Positions 13,095 through 32,517 of a DNA stretch of 64,000 nt are shown here, in pieces. Made by a program: the position numbers and the translations under genes. The DNA is taken from positions 63,637 through 127,636 of the forward strand of contig CDMY01000308.1 in assembly GCA_001179505.1 (NCBI GenBank). The letters are read 5' to 3'. The notes beneath the pieces are model-generated. The model was given only the letters and a program-made list of their open reading frames with translations. It ran no database searches and had not been told where the DNA came from. The DNA comes from Vitrella brassicaformis CCMP3155. Lineage: Eukaryota > Protista > Chromerida. Position 1 is the first letter of the stretch, and each line of letters opens with the position of its first letter.

Positions 13095-14036
13095 TGAAGA
13101 AGAAGGTGGTGGTTTGGGGTAAAGAGGAGAAGCCCGTCAAGGAGCTGGATCCCGTCTCTTTGTGGTCGTTCCTCGAGGAGAAGGGCTACTTGTGCATAGC
13201 GTCTCGTTGAGGCTGACGCTAAGGTGGCCAAGCTGAACGAGGTATTCGCAGCCACGGTGGCGGCAAAAACAGAGGCCAAGGTGAAGCTGGCGGCTCGAGA
13301 GGCAGCCACCGAGGCTGTCAATTCCGCTCGTCCTGTAGCCAACGAAGAGGCCAAGGGTGACGATCGAATTGTTCAGCAGCACTGTTAGCAACAGCGCTTG
13401 GAGGCGAATTTTTACCAGTTCATGCGCACTGCTGCCAACGACAATGCCGAGATGTTGGCGGTCATCCGCGATGCTCAACAGCAAGGACTGGGAGCTCGTG
13501 CGATGTACTTAAGTGTGCACTATACCTTCGCCAGCTTCCCCGTCAAGAAGGTAAGAACAATTGGGTAAGAAGCAATCAATCCATGCAGCCCTGCCTTGTA
13601 TATGCGTACGCCTGTCGTTTCGACAGAGACGGTGTCGGTGACTCGACGAGAGCACAAGTTTGTCGTCAGAGACAGCCCACAGAGGACACTCAGCTTTACC
13701 GGGGCCTTCCTGAAGTAGAGACACACACCGCCAAGTGAGGGCCAGACACGAGCTGCTACGTGGAATGGATACCATCCGAGACAGATAAAGAGCCATTGTG
13801 GATGGCATGCTATCAACAACGTGTGTGCGGCGAAAACAAACTTTCTCTGGACGACATGCAGGACATCGCCAGTGCGTGCTTTGTCCAATTTTGTTTGGAT
13901 CATGGAATGGGAGAGGAGAAGTGGTTCTTCACTCGCGATCCTGTGCATGGAGACATCAATGGCAACTACCATGATCAAGTGCTCGATGAGGTGTTCTTCA
14001 GCAATTCAAAGTCGCCAGAAGGACTCAGCAGAGAGG
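13095..14036 (+). pseudogene. Josephin (ataxin-3/JOSD-like) deubiquitinase pseudogene
   Basis: 13770-13826 reads YHPRQIKSHCGWHAINNVC. After a frameshift at about 13821-13828 (extra TG) it continues GENKLSLDDMQDIA...HGDINGNYHDQVLDEVF. In-frame TAGs upstream at 13386-13388 and 13716-13718; donors at 13551 and 14037. Confidence 0.65.
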
Positions 14037-15559
14037 TCGGTGCAGCACATACGAACACACACAGATACACATACAGACACATCGTTACAGGTCTATAATT
14101 GTTATAGGTGGTTGTTGACACGTGTGTGTGTGTGTGTGTGTGTGTGCAGTGGTCAAACAGGGTGACACCGACGGCGTCATGCAACTGGAGCTTAAAAAAG
14201 CCAGCGTCAACAAAAAGTATTCATCACAGACAGACCCCGACGAGCTTTCGACGCCCCTCTCTCTCCTCTCTCTGTGTGTGTGTGTGTGTGCGTGTCTGTG
14301 TGGGTGGGTTGGGTGCTCTGTCTGCGTGTCTGTGCGGATGGGTTGGGTGTGTGTGCAGGACGCTACAACAGCCTACAGCGACACACAGCTCAGAGACAGG
14401 TGCATTTGCACTACTCCGACGCTCCGCAAGGCGTCACGACACCGACTCTGTGTCGAGTCAGAGCGTCGTCAAGCATACATGTACAATGTACGCCGCCCTC
14501 TATACATACACACAACAAGGAATCCATCACATGTCTCTCTGACTTGTGTCGATCTGCTCTCAGGCCACCGCGTTTCTGCGGGTAGGGGTGAGTCGTTTGG
14601 TGCGTGGGCGTTGGTGGATGGTGAGGTTGCCTCGCAACTTCACGACGACGCTTCGGTAATGTGTCGAGCTGGCCGTTGAGGAGCAGATCGACAATGAGCT
14701 TACAGCTCACCGTTCGCCGTCCGTCGGGCAAACTGCACATCGACCTTCACTTGAGCATCAACAGGGTGCCGCCACCAAGGTTCGACGACACCGACGAAGA
14801 GAGATGGTTTGTGTCATGGGCAGAGGAAGCATTATGAGAAGAGCAAAGGACAGGTGCACATTCTTTTAAACGCCCCACGGTTACCTTCAAGTGTTCTCTC
14901 TCTCTTCGCTTTGCTGCTGGATGTGTGTCTCTTTCTGTGTTTTCCCACAGGATGATGTCCACGGACATGGCCGTTGTCGAGTCTATCAAGGGGGAGACCA
15001 CGTGCTATGGGCTGTCGGCAGTTCGGAGGCTTTGCAATGTTTCAGAGCCGGCATGATTTAATGCAATTCGGTAGAGACACGCACACGCAGCCTCACCTGC
15101 CAGTTGCCATGTTGTCTATTGCTTGCGTTACATCTGTAATATCAGTTGTCGAGCCTGCGGCTTTTTGGTTGCATCAACCGACAGCCCCCTCACGGACAGC
15201 ATCAGGCTGCAGTCCGTCTACCGGTATGTGTGCAGCCAACAAACACACGCAGAGACACAGAGACAGAGAGAGAAGGAGAGAGCATTGTCTGTCTGTACGT
15301 CAGAACATGGCGGGACGGCCCCATTGTGGCCGATCTGTTGCGTTGTGTCGGCGACAGGCGGCGTCTGGTGTTTGTGATATGCAATGACCACCACGTCTTC
15401 GGCGCCTCCGTCGTCCATTGTCACTTTTCTGATGACACTGCCGGGCTTCGGACTCAAGTTGACGTCCATGCTGGTGCAGGTCGGTCAGTCTGGTTTATCA
15501 ATTTGAGATAATCTATTGGTGTCTTTTTTTGACTGTTCGTTCCTGCATAGTTATTTCTG

Positions 15560-24710: not shown

Positions 24711-26593
24711 GTGATTGATGCGATGGGGGGCAGCTGTTCGGTTTGGTCAGATGTCAGCTGCCTGCGGCTCGAGGACATCGAAATCGTGCATGAGTACGAA
24801 ACCACTGAGGCGACCCGGCGGCTGACTGAGGGAATTGTCCGTCGCACCTTCACTTACCAGCAGCAAGTCACGGAACTCATCCAACGGCAAGAGGCCGACG
24901 CGGATCATGTGCTCATGCTGCGTGTGCATGGTCTCGAACCGGACAATATAGCGTGCCCCTGGCCGTATCGGCTTCTGGCGCTTGTCATCGAGAACCTGAG
25001 CGACCACACAGTGCCGACCATGGGAGCCCTGTGCAGCGAATCGGATTGGCGTGTACGTCGTGTTTGTTTCCCTCCCTGGCCGTCTCGTCAGCTGGAGGCG
25101 GCCATAATGAACGCTCTGGTTAGCAGCAGAGAGGCACATGCGAACTTACAGACATCATCCTGCTGTCTCTCTGTCTCTCTGTCTGTCTGTCTCTCTGTCT
25201 GTGTCTTTCTGTACGTCAGATCGACGGCGGGGCCAACATCGACAGCGTTGCCACCGGGGACGACGACACGCCACTTCGTGTGGCCATTCGTGGGGTCAAC
25301 CAGAGTGCCTTGAGAGTCCTTCTGGTGCGCAACGCTGCGGTGCATAGTCCTTATGGCCCCTTTGTCTTGGACCTGCCCGTGCCCCGCAGCGGCGAGCATC
25401 GTGACAATCCAGTGTGCCGCGACTACGAAAAAGGGCTCTTGTCGATCTATCGGCTGCTTATCCAGCATGATGCCACACTTGCAACCGAACAAGACCAGCA
25501 GCGCTGCAATCTGGTTCGAGCAGCCAAATACGAGCACGGGCACTATTCCCAGGCCTTCATCGATGAGTACATAGACTTGCTGGCGGCAAACGGGGCTGAT
25601 GTGAAAGCACAGAACAGCAATGGGTTGACGCCTCTGCACAATGCGGCATCGCTCGGCTCCACCTGTATGGTCGCCTCCCTGGGCCGCCATCTGACCGCTG
25701 CGGACGTCAACAGTGGGACCCGAGGCGATCCCAACAAGACGCCCCTAGCTTTAGCCGCAAGTGGCCTCGAATCAGCGATTTGGACATCGGAGAACGACAC
25801 AGAAAATCAAGAACAAAAGGACAAAGCGCTCAGCGAGATTCCCCGCTTCTGGGCGACGATCCGCGCGTTGCTGAGAATGGGGGCCGACATCGACCGCATG
25901 CCCACAAACACCACTGACCAGATCGGTCGTCAACAGCTGGTGCTGCCCGACTACATGATCGTCCTGAACGAGTTGCCCACTGCGGCGATGTCAGCTGTCA
26001 ATGCGGCCCTGCGACCTCAACGCAGCCTCGCTGCCTTCCTCATGAAATCCCTCCCCACCCTGCTCGCCCACCTGCAGTGTCTCTCTGGCGCCTCTGTGGC
26101 CATCCCGCCTCCTATCCCCGCCTCCCATGGATATGGCCCACTCGAGGGAGAGGCCATTGGCTGGAAGATCGCCGCCATGTGCTTCGACTGGGATGCTGCT
26201 GCCACGATGATCAGTCATACTCTGCCATTCCGCAACAGCACCGTCGCTCGTCGCGTGACGGCCGCAGCGGATCACTTTGTCAAGTCGGCTGTCTTCGAGG
26301 CCAGCTGCAACAAGGAGGTGGTGGGCAGGACGACTAATGTCGGCGGCGAAACGGTGCGTGTCCCGCTGCAGTGCTTCGCCATCACGGCTGACAGCCGCCC
26401 GAATGAGGTCGTGCACACGCATGGCCGTCTAGGGCTGCGTGAGGTGGTGCACAGGGCCCGGCTGGACGAGGCGGCCCGGTATGACCTGGTGGGCGTAGTC
26501 AAGGGCTTCAATGAGCATTTGGGCATTGACGACTGCCAGCTGTCGTGGCGCATCGACGATAGGGGGCAGTGGGTGTCGCTCGAGATCGACTGA
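24711..26593 (+). CDS. Ankyrin-repeat protein of a lineage-expanded family
   Basis: Exon 24711-25118 (...RQLEAAIMNAL) splices across intron 25119-25219 to IDGGANIDSVATGDDDTPLRVAIRGVNQSALRVLL. Further ANK repeats GADVKAQNSNGLTPLHNAASLG and KTPLALAA; stop at 26591-26593. An acceptor at 24710 implies an upstream exon. Confidence 0.85.
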
Positions 26594-27988: not shown

Positions 27989-30116
27989 CTACTGTGAGCC
28001 ACGGGAGGCTGTCAATGTGATTAGGCCCCCCACCGGCCAATCATCCGCCCAGCTCTCCACCGTCACGGGGAAGTGTCCGATCGTCGAGCCGTCGGGGAAG
28101 ACGGCACGGATGGACGCGCGAGCTGGGTCTGATGCTCCGGCTGAGAGGCTCACAGACTGCGGCCCGGGGACGTGGTCGAACAGGGCCGACAGGAGGGCGG
28201 GGGTGAAGGCGGCACGAATGCGGTTGCCAGCACCCTCCGCAGACACTGAACACGCACACACGAGACGGCAGTGAGAAAGAGATATGGATCGCATCTTTGT
28301 CTTTGCTCACCCTGATAGACGTAGAAGCACAGCTTGTCTATCCTCGGCAGATTAGTGCGATTGACAGCAGCTACCATCTCCTCAGTCCCCAGCTCATCTA
28401 GAGCCCCCTCGCTCAGCCAAATCATCACCTTCCGCACCTCCCTCCCGCCGCCCAGAACTCCCAACACGCCCAGCGCATCAACAGACAACCTCCTGGTGAC
28501 GACCTCGGCCACCTGGTTGGCCATCTTGTCAGCCAGGAGATGACCGACACTCGCACACAGCCAGCCACAGATCCACAGCTGACCCGCTCTCGGGAATCGC
28601 TGCAGGTGCTCGATGATGGTGGGGTGCGGCAAGGGTGTGTGGGGTGGAGGCGGTGGGTCGATGTGGCCCCGCACAGACACCTTCTCAGCGCGATCGAATG
28701 AGAGGCTGGATGCGACGTCGACGGCCGCGTCGCTGGGGCTGTCGATAGGGTGGGTGAGGTCGTGCTGAGTGATGGCGTAGACCACACATCTCGCCCGCCG
28801 CGCGAGCTGGTGCATGATGGCCTTGAAGAGGGGGGAAGGATTGGGGGGGAAATCGTCGCTGTAGAACAGGGACAACTCGAAGTGCTGGACGAAAGGCGAG
28901 CTGCTGAATGCGACTTGGGCGTCGGGTCGGCAGCATGCCCTGCGGAGCGACTCGACCGACTCCACGAGGGGAAGGATGCTGCCGTCGATGGAGCGAATCT
29001 CCATCCACAGGGTGAGCCGGGTGAGTGTCTGGCGGCATCCACGCGACCACAGCGCTGCCTGAAACGGACACACGAGTGAGAGGCCATGAGAGAACAACAC
29101 ACCCGTCATCCTTCCCATGTGTTGGTAGGTCACCTGCAGTCGGTCCACCGCTGCACGAGCAGCGTCAGGACTGCCGCGAAGGACGACGGTGCCGATGCGT
29201 TCCAGATGTCCCAGAGGCCCCGGCTGCCCGGCCGCTGCCACCGGCATGTACTCAAACACACCCGCCCACTCGTCAGCCTCAAATTCCCCATCCACATGCC
29301 GCAGCGAACGAGACGAGCCGACGAACTGTCCCACATCACTCGCATCCCACCCCTGCTGGGCAAGGCGCTCGAATGACGGCATCAGCCAGCCCCTGTTGGC
29401 CAGGCCGGAATGAGCGAGAGTGACGCCACTGACAGTCTCGAGGGCGCCAAGGGAGGGGGGCGGCTGCACGATGGACGGGAGGGGCGGGTCACGTCGCTGC
29501 AGTGACTGCATCTCCCTCCTGGTCAGCTGGGCGCCCTCCAACGTGATTGTCCTCAGCGTGCTGCCCTGCATGTTGGCTGCCCGCCGGCCGGCAACGTGCC
29601 CCTCGATCGTCTTGATGAAGACATCAAAGCACCAGCAAACGGCGCCCATGGGATAGCGCAAGACGATAGCTGTCAGCCGTGTGAGCCGGGCCGCCCATTT
29701 GGTGACCAGATCTAGAGGGACTCGCTGCCAGATGCGCCGCTCCGCGCTGTCGGATGAGCTTATGATGAGGTTGCGGTGCTTCGGCAATGAGTGCTGCGAG
29801 GTGTTGTCCGACAGCTGGACGAGTAGACAGAGGGGGAGGAAGGCCGTGATGCAGGTGAGCAGGCCAGGCTGCACAAGATGAAGACAAAGAGCGACAGTGA
29901 GCCATCATCTCTCCATTGCGTCTGCCGTGATTTCCTCACCGTGTCTGATATCTGCTGCCTCAGTTCCCTCTCCCTCTCCTCCCTCTGTGCCTGTCGCCCC
30001 TCCTCATCGCTCGCAGCAGCAGAAGATGACGGCTCGGTGGCGGCCTCGCGTGGCCTGCAACGACACGCACATACAGTGGACGATGATCCAGCACACATTA
30101 AAGGCACGGCGTCCAT
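27989..30116 (-). CDS. Lineage-specific hypothetical protein (expanded family, possible F-box-like N-terminus), multi-exon
   Basis: Long GC3-rich frame 28150-29874 with short introns (e.g. about 29062-29132). First exon MDAVPL...RERELRQQISDT splices to PGLLTCITAFLPLCLLVQLS; last exon ends TASRGSQ-stop at 27989. Confidence 0.7.
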
Positions 30117-30679
30117 CCATCGTGCAGCAATGCAGCCCCACCTGACGGCCGTCATCGGCAGCAGCAGCAGCAGCAGCAGCGTCAGACATGACTGTCCGTC
30201 ACCCAATGAAGCAAGCACCAGACATCGCTGTGGATGAAGCGCCTGAAACACGCCAAGCAGTGAATGTGGTGCTATTGTCGGCCGAGCTGTCGGCGCGTTG
30301 CTGTTCGTCTTTGCTTCGCGGCACTCACTCGTGTCGTTCATCGTTCATCGATTTATCATCGATGTTTCGATGGAATGCCTTGCATCCCGATCAGCGAGCC
30401 ACGAAAAGGGCAACATCGAAGTGAATAAGCTCATCATACGGGTCGAGCTCTTTGAGCTCGCATCCCCAGGGCACGCAGTGGGCGCGCTGGCGGTGCGTCG
30501 TGAAGTGGACCTTCTTCTGCTTCGCTCAAAGATATCGGCTCTGCTGTGTTGTCTCATCTTCCTTTTGCCCTTCAATTCGGGGGATTCGAAGGTGGGAGGC
30601 AGGGCAAGGGCGGGAAGCACAAGGGAGGCAGGGAGTGATGCATGCAAGAATGCTTCGATGCATTGCTGTCCTTTCACAG

Positions 30680-32517
30680 GCATTTGGCGTGAGCCGTTGC
30701 CGTTTCATCACCGCCTGCAGGCCGCCAGACAGGCTCAGCCGGGTGCGAGAGGAACACATGAGAGCAAGCCATCATGTAGGCAGCTTTCTCCTGTATCCTG
30801 CCTTTCTGGGTGTGCTGCTTTACAGACCCTATGTCGTTGCAGCAGCTCTACGAGACGAGCCGGCGCGACAACACGGCAGACTGCTGGTGGGAGGAGGAGG
30901 GGGGCAACGACAGCCTCGGCCACCGGCTCTTCTTCGGGGTGAGCATTCTTCCCCCACTAGCGTCGCTGAAGTTCAGCGAGCAGACACCCGACCCGACGGA
31001 TGGGTCCTACACCCAGGAGTGCGGCCTTCATGCGTGCAACATCGCCCTGCAGTACCCCGCGTTGCCACACGAGAAGGCGTACTTCAAGCGGACAACCAAC
31101 GACGCCTTGACGGCCGACGGGGTGCGGCGCGAGGAGGACTGGCACCGACTGTGCCTGGGGGACATCGGCCGATTCATCAGCAACAAGCGGAGAGACGACA
31201 AGGAGCCAGGCGTGGGCGAGGGCGAGAGGACGTCGAAAGGGGCGAAACCTACCACCTCACTCAAGGGGGTGAGTGATGAGGGAGGGAGAGCGATATGGTG
31301 ATATCCGTTTGGCTCCTTCGTTGTGTGTGTGTGTGTGTGTATGGATGGATGTGTGTGTGTAGGTGAAGGGCGACGATAATGCGCTGTGTTCGAAGGTCGG
31401 TCTGCTCACGGACCTGAATGAGGAGAGGGCGGGGGCGGTGATCGCTATCATGCTACGTGAGGATGAACACCTGCTGACCTTCAAGCCGCTGCGAGAGGGA
31501 TTTTGGGCTGACGGCGACTCCATCGTCGCCAACAACCGCAGCCGCCGCCTGATGACTAAGAGGGACACCGCAGAGAGGGTGACCAAGGTGCGCTCTCACA
31601 TATGACACACATCACGCGACCAGCGACTTTTGTACTCTCATTTCGGTCCATTCAGGACTCCATCGTGGTGTTTGGGGACGAGAAGGCTTACAATGCGGCG
31701 AAGAAGCAACAGCAGGACAACCGAGATGCGCCCATCGCATTAGACGATGACGACGAGCTGCAGCCCCCGGCTCCAGCAGCAGCAGCCGCGGCAGACCACC
31801 CACCTCCCATCGACATGGAAGCCGAGGTTGGGGACAGCCATGCGCCCCAGCACCCTCACCCCGCACCGCATTCGAAACAGCAGGCTGACCGACATGACGA
31901 TGAGGGTATGGAGGTCGAGGTAGGGGGAGGCGGGGACGCTGCGTTGGCCGTGGGCATCGGGGGCGGCGGTGACGCTGTTGGGGGCGGCGAGGCACGGGCG
32001 GCTGCCCATGATATGGACATCGACAATGGCCATGGTGAGTGAGTCAAGCAGTGAACAGACAGATCGACAGACAGGGAATAGGGAGGGGGAGGGAGGGAGT
32101 GTTCTTCGGATACACGCCTCAACATGTTTGTTGTGCGTGCCTTCACTGCAGAAGGGCGCGGCGCGCAGCAAGACGATGAGTACGCAGTCACACACACACA
32201 CACACACACACACAACACGCAGCCCGACCGGTCCTCATGCACCTGTGTGGTCGATGACTGGTGACTCATTCAGGTTGTCCCTCGCCGAGCGTCTCAAGGC
32301 CAAGAAGAACAACAAGAGGAAGGCCGCGGAGGGAGAAGAGAGAGAGCGCCAGGAGGGGCCCCCGCCGCCCAAGAAGTCTCGCTTGCTGGAAGAGATGGCC
32401 GACACGGACAGCTGGCAGGCTAAGAAGGGGCGCATCGACCTCAATGGCGGGTACCGACTCCGCCGCACAAGAGTGCGCGCCAGGCGGTGTGTGGACGCTA
32501 CACGTGCCCTCAGCTAG
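30680..32517 (+). CDS. Divergent Josephin-family deubiquitinase with acidic and basic low-complexity tail
   Basis: GSYTQECGLHACNIALQ (Cys 31020-31022); intron 31269-31362; IMLREDEHLLTFKPLREGFWADGDSI (His 31468-31470, Asp 31516-31518). Tail has DDDDELQ, poly-Ala and KAKKNNKRKAA..PPPPKKSRL; stop at 32515-32517. 5' exon(s) uncertain. Confidence 0.65.

What the first reader, a model, noticed from the sequence alone, without database searches (positions are those of the whole stretch)
30826..32517. Apparently intact, highly divergent Josephin-like deubiquitinase with a complete Cys-His-Asp triad
Seen: TQECGLHACNIALQ and, in the next exon in phase, IMLREDEHLLTFKPLREGFWADGDSI. Established: ataxin-3 has Q..SLCAQHCLNNLLQ and CNYKEHWFTVRKLGKQWFNLNSL, and JOSD proteins use Asp as the third residue. 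Spacing matches, but HWF is HLL and NN is NI, so it may escape standard annotation and have altered specificity. The N-terminal extension and basic NLS-like tail are unlike ATXN3/JOSD. With the pseudogene at 13.7 kb this suggests a lineage-specific Josephin radiation.
Basis: partly seen in the sequence, partly recalled or inferred. Interest (0 to 1): 0.75.

Follow-up and report, generated by a model that had tools for sequence, protein, structure and literature searches.

The report
Divergent Josephin-like protease gene, Vitrella
This is an intact, spliced gene of the alga Vitrella brassicaformis. Its protein carries a very diverged copy of the Josephin (ataxin-3-type) ubiquitin-removing protease domain, and it belongs to a family of at least 15 copies, some of them decayed, seen so far only in this species.

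Summary
Both quoted peptides are present, in phase across a GT-AG intron, in a gene already annotated only as "unnamed protein product" of Vitrella brassicaformis (P0001, 488 aa).

Standard tools see nothing. Pfam, PDB sequence searches, a HMMER scan of 1.84 billion proteins, and viral and metagenome scans found only Vitrella paralogues. Two AlphaFold2 runs failed (pLDDT 37 and 47).

The Josephin reading is nevertheless supported by four results:
- **Profile-profile:** a family profile against 30 Pfam-verified Josephins gives hhalign probability 89%, P 2.3e-6. It puts His233, Asp249 and Ser250 on the Josephin His, Asn/Asp and Ser. Controls stayed at noise: USP P 0.69, C39 P 0.07, reversed P 0.63, shuffled maximum 18.7 against a real score of 47.8.
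- **Cys motif:** it falls on the Josephin Cys motif only weakly (P 0.055).
- **Josephin HMM:** it ranks four family His exons directly after the genome's true Josephin exons.
- **ESM Atlas:** 22 of the 30 nearest clusters are Josephin.

The gene differs from known Josephins by an 8-residue insert between the oxyanion Gln and the Cys, a SIM-like acidic motif where ataxin-3 has UIMs, and a basic tail. The 13.7 kb locus is a frameshifted Josephin-like relic.

The scan noted this family before on other Vitrella DNA, without confirmation. Enzyme activity is untested.

The parts
30826..31268 (+). Exon with the probable start ATG (30831) and the Cys half of the domain: FSEQ motif, an 8-residue insert, the Cys helix and a variable helical region.
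   Evidence: Translation. It matches P0001 residues 50-197. DNA similarity to the C91 paralogue begins at about 30789-30807, just before this ATG.
30981..30983 (+). Gln102, the predicted oxyanion-hole Gln. It lies 13 residues before the Cys, against 5 in Josephins.
   Evidence: The extended hhalign path puts the family's conserved F-x-[EH]-Q Gln on the invariant Josephin Gln, followed by an insert. Posterior confidence there is low, so this is an inference.
31020..31022 (+). Cys115, the predicted nucleophile, within C-G-L-H-A-C-N-I-A-L-Q. His is at +3, Asn at +6 and Gln at +10, the same offsets as in the aligned Josephin row (C-A-Q-H-A-L-N-N-L-L-Q).
   Evidence: Invariant in all Cys exons of the family. 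hhalign of the Cys exons against Josephin aligns Cys to Cys at P 0.055. AlphaFold2 puts it at the start of helix 113-124.
31269..31362 (+). Intron, GT...(TG)n...AG, phase 0.
   Evidence: It is 86% identical to the intron of the C91 copy.
31363..31587 (+). Exon with the His/Asp half: strand GAVIAIML, His strand, Asp strand and the following helix.
   Evidence: Translation. hhalign against Josephin covers this block at probability 89%, P 2.3e-6.
31468..31470 (+). His233, the predicted general base.
   Evidence: Invariant in all His exons. Aligned to the invariant Josephin His.
31510..31521 (+). Asp247-Gly-Asp249-Ser250. Asp249 is the predicted third triad residue, and Ser250 corresponds to the invariant Josephin Ser.
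   Evidence: The family pattern is [WF]-x-[DN]-x-[DN]-[SP]. It is aligned to Josephin W/Y-x-[ND]-L-[ND]-S.
31656..32034 (+). Exon holding the last strand of the domain (SIVVF, 31659-31673), a helix, a SIM-like motif and an acidic/Gly-rich low-complexity stretch.
   Evidence: SIVVF aligns to Josephin SIFVV only on the extended, low-confidence path.
31731..31757 (+). PIALDDDDE, a hydrophobic core followed by an acidic run that resembles a SUMO-interacting motif.
   Evidence: The same kind of motif lies in the same place in paralogues: PMVIDDEE, AMAVDDDD, AIVMNLDDDD, IAMIADD. The SIM reading is an inference from the known consensus and was not tested.
32152..32179 (+). 28-nt mini-exon (EGRGAQQDDE).
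   Evidence: P0001 mapping and flanking AG/GT sites.
32274..32517 (+). Last exon: a basic, NLS-like tail (KAKKNNKRK ... PKKSRLL ... GRIDLNGGYRLRRTRVRA) and the TAG stop.
   Evidence: It is about 73% identical to the tail exon of the otherwise divergent C405 paralogue and is also recognisable on C255.
13719..14162 (+). Frameshifted Josephin-like relic (YHPRQIKSHCGWHAINNV, then a shift of frame). This is a separate locus and not part of the gene.

Best explanation
The gene encodes a nuclear-targeted protein whose core (about residues 95-280 of P0001) is a very diverged Josephin-type, papain-fold cysteine isopeptidase domain.

Inferred mechanism:
- Cys115, at the start of a helix, is the nucleophile.
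- His233, on a beta-strand, is the general base.
- Asp249, on the next strand, orients the His, as Asn134 does in ataxin-3 and Asp does in JOSD proteins.
- Gln102 probably supplies the oxyanion hole across a family-specific insert.

Downstream lie a conserved hydrophobic-acidic SIM-like motif, in the place where ataxin-3 has UIMs, and a conserved basic tail. These would recruit a ubiquitin-like-modified substrate and send the protein to the nucleus.

The gene is one member of a Vitrella-only family of at least 15 loci that arose by duplication and includes several decayed copies.

Shown: gene structure, conservation, family size, and remote homology to Josephin. Inferred: fold, catalysis, substrate and localisation.
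For: - **Gene model and identity:**
- **Conservation:** the Cys, His and Asp/Asn motifs are kept across paralogues. dN/dS is 0.32.
- **hhalign, tool run:** family alignment A8 against A9 gives P 3.8e-4 on the His block. A9 is 30 ORFs that all match PF02099.
- **hhalign, enriched profile:** with the intronless C501 member added, probability is 89%, P 2.3e-6, score 47.8, 49 columns. Against that, 50 column shuffles gave mean 11.7, maximum 18.7.
- **Specificity controls:** reversed Josephin P 0.63, USP P 0.69, C39 P 0.071 at a non-homologous place. For scale, Josephin against USP itself gives only P 0.009.
- **Cys block:** aligned to the Josephin Cys block at P 0.055. The extended path is collinear over the whole domain.
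- **Josephin HMM, unfiltered:** after the true Josephin exons it ranks family His exons 7th, 9th, 10th and 11th of 4263 ORFs, all on HMM positions 96-153.
- **ESM Atlas, residues 95-300:** 22 of 30 nearest clusters are Josephin, top score 0.92. The Atlas's own model has TM 0.55-0.57 to Josephin clusters.
- **Secondary structure in both AlphaFold2 runs:** Cys at a helix start, His and Asp on consecutive strands.
Against: - Pfam Josephin does not hit any member, even at E 10.
- The family's own HMMs do not find the genome's canonical Josephin exons.
- No PDB chain matches by sequence.
- Both AlphaFold2 models are unconfident (pLDDT 36.7 and 47.5). Foldseek and VIA-align found nothing, so the fold and the triad geometry are unverified.
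- The significant profile signal rests mainly on one block of about 50 columns.
- The Cys block matches C39 as well as it matches Josephin (P 0.042 against 0.055).
- The oxyanion Gln is displaced by 8 residues.
- The second Asn of the Josephin NN motif is Ile in this gene.
- The enriched alignment was built in my own script and contains a few misplaced fragments.
- There is no expression or activity data.
Confidence: 0.68

Rival explanations
1. It is a papain-fold (clan CA) cysteine peptidase, but not specifically a Josephin. It would be an independent branch nearer to USP-, UCH- or C39-like enzymes, and the His-block similarity would reflect features common to the whole clan.
For: - The Cys motif aligns to the C39 Cys motif as well as to the Josephin one (P 0.042 against 0.055).
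- The ESM Atlas structure search also lists USP and C39 clusters at TM 0.47-0.54.
- No HMMER-level Josephin hit exists.
Against: - The His/Asp block is specific. P is 2.3e-6 against Josephin, 0.69 against USP, and 0.071 at a wrong position against C39.
- 22 of the 30 nearest ESM feature clusters are Josephin, and C39 first appears at rank 24.
- The alignment with Josephin is collinear over the whole domain.
- UCH and OTU were not tested; the UCH pattern scan gave no usable sequences.
Confidence: 0.15
2. The domain is Josephin-derived but no longer an enzyme. The family would be a fast-evolving, partly decaying set of pseudo-enzymes or binding modules.
For: - Several copies are broken: C86 carries a stop, C887 is mis-modelled or has a shifted frame, and the 13.7 kb and C602 relics are decayed.
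- The oxyanion Gln is displaced.
- Constraint is only moderate: dN/dS is 0.32, and the introns are more similar than synonymous sites.
- AlphaFold2 cannot fold the domain.
Against: Cys, His and the Asp/Asn pair are the most conserved positions in all intact copies, across about 30% identity. That is what selection for catalysis predicts.
Confidence: 0.12
3. It is a circularly permuted relative of the Ulp/SENP (clan CE, C48) SUMO proteases. The DCG-type Cys motif and the H...DS motif fit, and so does the SIM-like motif.
For: - The ESM Atlas on exon 1 alone gave weak C48 and ElaD/SseL leads, all below 0.9.
- By eye, the motifs resemble the C48 motifs.
- A SIM-like motif is conserved.
Against: - The order of catalytic residues is Cys-His-Asp, not His-Asp-Cys.
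- With the whole domain, the ESM neighbours are Josephin, and no C48 cluster is among those shown.
- There is no Pfam C48 hit.
Confidence: 0.03
4. It is not a real protein-coding gene, and the motifs are a chance pattern in an over-predicted model.
For: - There are no homologues outside Vitrella.
- The upstream annotated exons (30264-30741) look doubtful and are not shared with the C91 copy.
Against: - All five exons from 30826 to 32517 have canonical splice sites, and no in-frame stop lies in them.
- Conservation is exon-specific in 15 or more paralogous loci, including an intronless copy with the same domain order.
- dN/dS is below 1.
- The profile match to Josephin is significant.
Confidence: 0.02

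Closest known systems
Josephin domain proteases (ataxin-3, ATXN3L, JOSD1/2; Pfam PF02099, MEROPS family C86)
   Same: - The order Gln ... Cys ... His ... Asn/Asp.
- The Cys-helix motif with His at +3, Asn at +6 and Gln at +10.
- The His strand, followed 16 residues later (15 in Josephins) by [ND]-Ser.
- A helix, then a final hydrophobic strand (SIVVF against SIFVV).
- A short ubiquitin-like-binding-type motif after the domain.
- hhalign probability 89%.
   Different: - No Pfam hit.
- An 8-residue insert between the Gln and the Cys.
- Gly in place of Ala after the Cys.
- NI in place of NN, although paralogues on C501 and C581 keep ALNNLL.
- HLL in place of HWF.
- A longer helical region between the Cys and the His.
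- A SIM-like acidic motif instead of UIMs, and a basic tail.
- 15 or more copies, against 0-2 Pfam-detected Josephins per apicomplexan genome (PMC2408969).
The canonical Josephin gene of Vitrella itself (contig C366, about 253.7-254.4 kb; a second, weaker one on C911)
   Same: It is in the same genome and has the same domain order. It served as a positive control for my Josephin HMM.
   Different: It is detected by Pfam above the cut-off. It has the normal QxxxxC spacing and the HWF and NLDS motifs. The family's HMMs do not detect it, so the family is not a recent duplicate of it.
Giant-virus Josephin-like ORFs (for example L040, contig GVMAG-S-1074334-30)
   Same: These are short, diverged Josephin domains. 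The top two ESM Atlas feature neighbours of the Vitrella domain are clusters with mainly Nucleocytoviricota members. L040 passes Pfam only narrowly, at 27.6 bits.
   Different: There is no pairwise similarity to P0001. No viral relative of the family turned up. A viral origin of the family is untested.
USP (C19) and bacteriocin-processing C39 peptidases
   Same: Both are clan CA with a Cys-His-Asp/Asn order. The Cys motif ECG..AC resembles the C39 motif.
   Different: Profile-profile scores are at noise level: USP P 0.39-0.69, C39 P 0.07-0.17.

Membership tests
Josephin (Pfam PF02099 / MEROPS C86) | A match to the curated family HMM at or above the gathering score. | tested here: not met
   There is no PF02099 hit at E up to 10 for the exons, for P0001-P0004, for 22 family pieces or for the intronless C501 ORF. 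The PF02099 scan of the genome finds C366 and C911 but not this locus.
Josephin (Pfam PF02099 / MEROPS C86) | Catalytic His on a strand, followed about 15 residues later by [ND]-x-[ND]-Ser (third triad residue plus an invariant Ser). | tested here: met
   His233, Asp249 and Ser250 align to the invariant Josephin His, Asn/Asp and Ser. hhalign gives P 3.8e-4 with the tool's alignment and P 2.3e-6, probability 89%, with the enriched profile. Controls were negative.
Josephin (Pfam PF02099 / MEROPS C86) | Nucleophile Cys in the helix motif C-A-x-H-x-x-N-N-x-x-Q. | tested here: inconclusive
   Cys115, His118, Asn121 and Gln125 have the same spacing and align Cys to Cys. However, P is only 0.055, and the C39 motif scores equally. 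The second Asn is Ile in this gene, and NN is kept in the C501 and C581 paralogues.
Josephin (Pfam PF02099 / MEROPS C86) | Oxyanion-hole Gln five residues before the Cys. | tested here: not met
   The conserved Gln102 lies 13 residues before the Cys. The extended hhalign path pairs it with the Josephin Gln across an insert, at low confidence. The residue at -5 is Ser.
Josephin (Pfam PF02099 / MEROPS C86) | A papain-like fold with the triad residues adjacent in 3D. | tested here: inconclusive
   AlphaFold2 gave pLDDT 36.7 and 47.5, and the fold searches were empty. The ESM Atlas's own low-confidence model (pLDDT 0.46) has TM 0.55-0.57 to Josephin clusters.
Josephin (Pfam PF02099 / MEROPS C86) | Deubiquitinating (isopeptidase) activity. 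| not testable with these tools
   This needs probe labelling and cleavage assays.
USP (Pfam PF00443, C19) | Profile similarity to the Cys box and His box. | tested here: not met
   hhalign against 40 giant-virus USP ORFs gives P 0.39 (A8) and 0.69 (enriched profile).
Peptidase C39 (Pfam PF03412) | Profile similarity over both the Cys and the His/Asp motifs. | tested here: not met
   Only the Cys motif aligns (P 0.042-0.17). The His block does not.

The most novel reading that the evidence does not exclude
Vitrella has evolved its own large family (15 or more loci) of ultra-diverged Josephin-type isopeptidases. They have exchanged ubiquitin-interacting motifs for a SUMO-interacting-type motif plus a nuclear tail. 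On this reading they are nuclear proteases aimed at SUMO or mixed SUMO-ubiquitin conjugates, or at another ubiquitin-like modifier. Their rapid birth and death would reflect a genetic conflict, for example with viruses or mobile elements. The nearest feature neighbours being giant-virus Josephins, and an earlier scan note of a Josephin next to a hAT transposase, hint in that direction.
Probability: 0.15. Interest if true: 0.65.

Novelty: new variant of a known kind. Interest (0 to 1): 0.45.

Why it matters
Josephins are usually a small, well-conserved deubiquitinase family. Pfam detected 0-2 per apicomplexan genome and 6 in man (PMC2408969).

Here a free-living relative of the apicomplexan parasites carries a hidden expansion of 15 or more loci that routine domain annotation misses completely. 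Three consequences follow:
- Deubiquitinase inventories based on Pfam undercount in alveolates.
- The family gives a natural series of extreme sequence variants of the Josephin active site: a moved oxyanion Gln, NN changed to NI, HWF changed to HLL.
- It offers a testable case of a Josephin core joined to a SIM-like motif rather than to UIMs.

The interest is moderate. The kind of enzyme is known, and no activity has been shown.

Tried and rejected
**Searches that found nothing**
- Pfam, exon by exon and on the full proteins: no family.
- Word-indexed protein search with exon 1, and with P0001 residues 53-310: only the protein itself and one paralogue.
- Exhaustive HMMER of the exon-1 profile against 1.84e9 representatives: four hits, all Vitrella.
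- PDB sequence searches with the protein and with three profiles: nothing relevant.
- Viral, metagenome and genome locus searches: no relatives, or the alignment was too diverged to search with.

**Structure**
- AlphaFold2 with 4 rows gave pLDDT 36.7, and with 22 rows (exon pieces kept as separate rows) 47.5.
- Foldseek against the PDB and VIA-align wide found nothing above noise.

**Other negative tests**
- The family HMMs against the genome's canonical Josephin exons scored at noise.
- BLASTP of P0001 against a viral Josephin ORF found nothing.
- The word search seeded with that viral ORF returned nothing.

**Building the control alignments**
- A DNA pattern for the Josephin C-terminal motifs in viral contigs gave two chance hits.
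- A UCH pattern scan gave two chance ORFs, so UCH was not tested.

**Ideas rejected**
- Transposon association: the only DNA shared with the C91 copy is about 1 kb of the gene itself. Neighbouring ORFs show only ankyrin repeats and no transposase.
- A permuted clan CE protease: rejected on residue order and on the whole-domain ESM result.

**Method and exclusions**
Full-length work used the database's own protein P0001, or single uninterrupted frames. In my scripts, each exon piece of the other paralogues stayed a separate alignment row.
- One metagenome locus (L131) looked vertebrate and JOSD2-like. It was left out and not examined further.
Full report
**Where we are.** The window is contig C308 of a 72.7 Mb, 1064-contig eukaryotic genome. 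The public databases hold the product of this gene as an "unnamed protein product / uncharacterized protein" of Vitrella brassicaformis CCMP3155 (P0001, 488 aa). The sequence is not human.

**Observation.** Both quoted peptides are present.
- TQECGLHACNIALQ is encoded at 31011-31052. IMLREDEHLLTFKPLREGFWADGDSI is encoded at 31447-31524.
- They lie in neighbouring exons joined in phase by a GT...AG intron.
- Mapping P0001 onto the window gives these exons: 30264-88, about 30532-93, 30682-741, 30826-31268, 31363-31587, 31656-32034, 32152-32179 and 32274-32517. From 30826 on, the splice sites are canonical.
- The three upstream annotated exons are doubtful. Similarity to the closest paralogue starts just before the ATG at 30831, so that ATG is the likely start.

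**The family.**
- Six-frame searches of the genome with exons, with P0004 and with exon profiles find relatives on at least 15 contigs. These are C91, C339, C676 (two places), C887 (two), C86, C624 (two), C405, C206, C452, C255, C113 (two), C399, C581, C501, C460 and C982.
- They fall into sub-groups only 30-40% identical.
- The invariant or nearly invariant positions are Y-x3-C-G-x-[HK]-A-x-N-[IM] and H-x11-[WF]-x-[DN]-x-[DN]-[SP]-I.
- Some copies are broken. C86 has a stop. The database model of the C887 gene, P0004, runs through a wrong frame.
- One copy, on C501, carries the whole domain in a single 387-aa open frame without introns. It reads C-P-Y-K-A-L-N-N-L-L, which is the Josephin ALNNLL motif.
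- The window gene and the C91 copy share about 1 kb of DNA, exons and introns, at 84% identity, and nothing beyond that.
- Their dN/dS is 0.32. Oddly, the introns are more alike (about 86%) than the synonymous sites (about 74%).
- Two features outside the domain are conserved. One is a hydrophobic-acidic motif about 45 residues after the Asp strand: PIALDDDDE, PMVIDDEE, AMAVDDDD, AIVMNLDDDD, IAMIADD. The other is a basic tail that is about 73% identical in the otherwise divergent C405 gene.

**Relatives elsewhere: none found.**
- Pfam finds no domain in any member.
- An exhaustive HMMER search of 1.84 billion representative proteins with an exon-1 profile returned four proteins, all from Vitrella.
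- Word-indexed searches, PDB sequence searches, and viral and metagenome scans added nothing.
- The genome has an ordinary Josephin gene on C366 and a weaker one on C911. Pfam detects both.
- The family's HMMs score those exons at noise level.
- So at ordinary sensitivity the Josephin reading fails, and the family looks like an orphan.

**Structure.** The full-length sequence used was the database's own P0001, and the other paralogues entered the alignments as separate exon pieces, by reference.
- AlphaFold2 gave pLDDT 36.7 with 4 rows and 47.5 with 22 rows.
- Foldseek and VIA-align found nothing above noise.
- The only structural information from these runs is the order of elements: a helix starting at Cys115, two long helices, then three strands that carry GAVIAIML, His233 and Asp247/249, then helices. 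This order is compatible with a papain-like domain but is not a test of one.

**Evidence that does point to Josephin.**

1. *ESM Atlas.* On residues 95-300 of P0001, 22 of the 30 nearest clusters by language-model features are Josephin (top score 0.92, 162 of 256 shared features). The Atlas's own low-confidence model has TM 0.55-0.57 to two Josephin clusters. USP and C39 clusters, also papain-fold, come slightly lower. By the tool's own calibration this is a lead, not proof.

2. *Profile-profile comparison.*
   - I collected natural Josephin sequences by scanning metagenome and viral contigs for the DNA pattern of the QxxxLCAxHxxNNxxQ motif.
   - I kept 30 uninterrupted open frames as alignment A9. 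All 30 match PF02099.
   - hhalign of the family alignment A8 against A9 gives one hit. P0001 residues 233-270 fall on the Josephin His/Asn block, with His on His, Asp249 on Asn/Asp and Ser250 on the invariant Ser. P is 3.8e-4 and the score 34.6.
   - Controls for A8 were a reversed Josephin alignment (score 12.9) and 60 column shuffles (mean 11.5, sd 1.8, maximum 17.2).
   - The Cys exons alone align Cys on Cys, His on His, Asn on Asn and Gln on Gln, at P 0.055.
   - I then built an enriched profile in a script: a core of P0001, P0002 and the intronless C501 frame, with 24 exon pieces added as fragments. With it the hit rises to probability 89%, P 2.3e-6, score 47.8 over 49 columns. It now includes the strand before the His.
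   - Fifty shuffles against the enriched profile gave mean 11.7, sd 2.0, maximum 18.7.
   - Specificity controls against the enriched profile were 40 giant-virus USP ORFs (P 0.69), 45 bacterial C39 domains (P 0.071, at a non-homologous place) and reversed Josephin (P 0.63).
   - For scale, Josephin against USP, a true clan-level relationship, gives P 0.009 here.
   - Extending the best path gives one collinear alignment over the whole domain: FSEQ on YHEkQ, an insert, the Cys helix, GAVIAIML on fIlN, the His and Asp strands, and SIVVF on SIFVV. Confidence outside the His block is low.

3. *Josephin HMM.* An HMM built from A9 was run without filters on 4263 ORFs from the window and the family loci.
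   - It ranks the true Josephin exons of C911 and C366 first.
   - Next comes the 13.7 kb open frame (E 0.002).
   - Family His exons take ranks 7, 9, 10 and 11: C676 at E 0.008, then C255, C405 and the window's own exon. All of them align to HMM positions 96-153.

**The 13.7 kb locus.** The frame 13719-14162 reads YHPRQIKSHCGWHAINNV. This has Josephin's Q-x4-C spacing and NN together with the family's CG. After that the coding sense moves to another frame. A copy on C602 shows that the window copy has lost one base right after AAC AAC. The C602 copy itself carries TAG and TAA stops. By tblastn the relic is not similar to the gene at 30.8 kb.

**Interpretation.** The gene most likely encodes a diverged Josephin-type cysteine isopeptidase. 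The predicted catalytic residues are Cys115, His233 and Asp249. Gln102 is the likely oxyanion residue, across an 8-residue insert.
- The conserved SIM-like motif stands where ataxin-3 has UIMs, and the basic tail looks like a nuclear localisation signal. Together they suggest a nuclear enzyme recruited to ubiquitin-like conjugates.
- The fold, the activity, the substrate and the localisation are all inferences.
- Rivals are another clan CA branch (0.15), a Josephin-derived pseudo-enzyme (0.12), a permuted clan CE protease (0.03) and a false gene (0.02).

**Membership.** The curated Pfam test and the Gln-to-Cys spacing are not met. The His/Asn-Ser block is met. The Cys motif and the 3D test are inconclusive. 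I therefore describe it as a new, very diverged variant of the Josephin kind, not as an ordinary member.

**Context and novelty.** Pfam-based counts give 0-2 Josephins per apicomplexan genome, and the family is described there as well conserved (PMC2408969). No paper in the searchable library mentions Josephin together with Vitrella. Earlier notes of this scan had flagged the same family on other Vitrella DNA, and a follow-up there could not confirm the protease reading. The profile-profile result here is what is added.

**Housekeeping.** One metagenome locus (L131) looked vertebrate and was left out.

Noticed in passing
window 13719-14162; L407 (G000:C602:10037-13216): A frameshifted Josephin-like relic. 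The window copy has a 1-nt deletion after ...ATCAACAAC. A second copy on C602 keeps the frame there but has TAG and TAA stops. The motif combines Josephin's QxxxxC and NN with the family's CG.
   Followed up: partly
L410:1264-2424 (G000:C501): An intronless family member with the whole domain in one 387-aa open frame. It has the Josephin-like ALNNLL motif and WADMET in place of WADGDS. Near-copies on C581 and C460 appear split or decayed. It may be a retrocopy or an ancestral intron-less form.
   Followed up: partly
window 31269-31362 and 31588-31655, against L016 (C91): The introns of the two closest paralogues are about 86% identical, while synonymous sites in the flanking exons are only about 74% identical. 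This is the opposite of the usual pattern. Possible causes are constraint on the introns, gene conversion, or diversifying change in the exons.
   Followed up: no
window 32274-32517; L033:4904-5095 (C405); L019:6204-6314 (C255): The basic C-terminal tail exon (KRKAAEG...K[KR]SRL...GRxxLxGG.R.RRTRVR) is about 73% identical between genes whose protease domains are only about 30% identical. This suggests exon exchange or strong selection on the tail.
   Followed up: no
P0004 / G000:C887:102.6-104.9 kb: The database model P0004 fuses two Cys-motif exons (YDLSCGFKATNM and YKADCGKHATNI). It also contains a stretch (ELRAMASRGSRGPSGRPL...) that is the wrong-frame reading of the paralogous exon. This is either a mis-annotation or a damaged tandem pair.
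   Followed up: partly
window 31300-31362 and 32180-32273: The introns carry long (TG)n runs before the acceptor and (CA)n runs after the donor. This fits the earlier scan note on this window about (CA)n...(TG)n introns.
   Followed up: no
window 25280-26593 (+) and 28150-29874 (-): Two long open frames lie upstream of the gene. The first has ankyrin repeats (Pfam E 4.6e-7). The second, 574 aa, has no Pfam match.
   Followed up: partly
L040:500-1198 (IMG/VR GVMAG-S-1074334-30): A giant-virus contig encodes a diverged Josephin ORF that barely passes Pfam (27.6 bits against a cut-off of 26). The word-indexed protein search found no relatives for it.
   Followed up: partly
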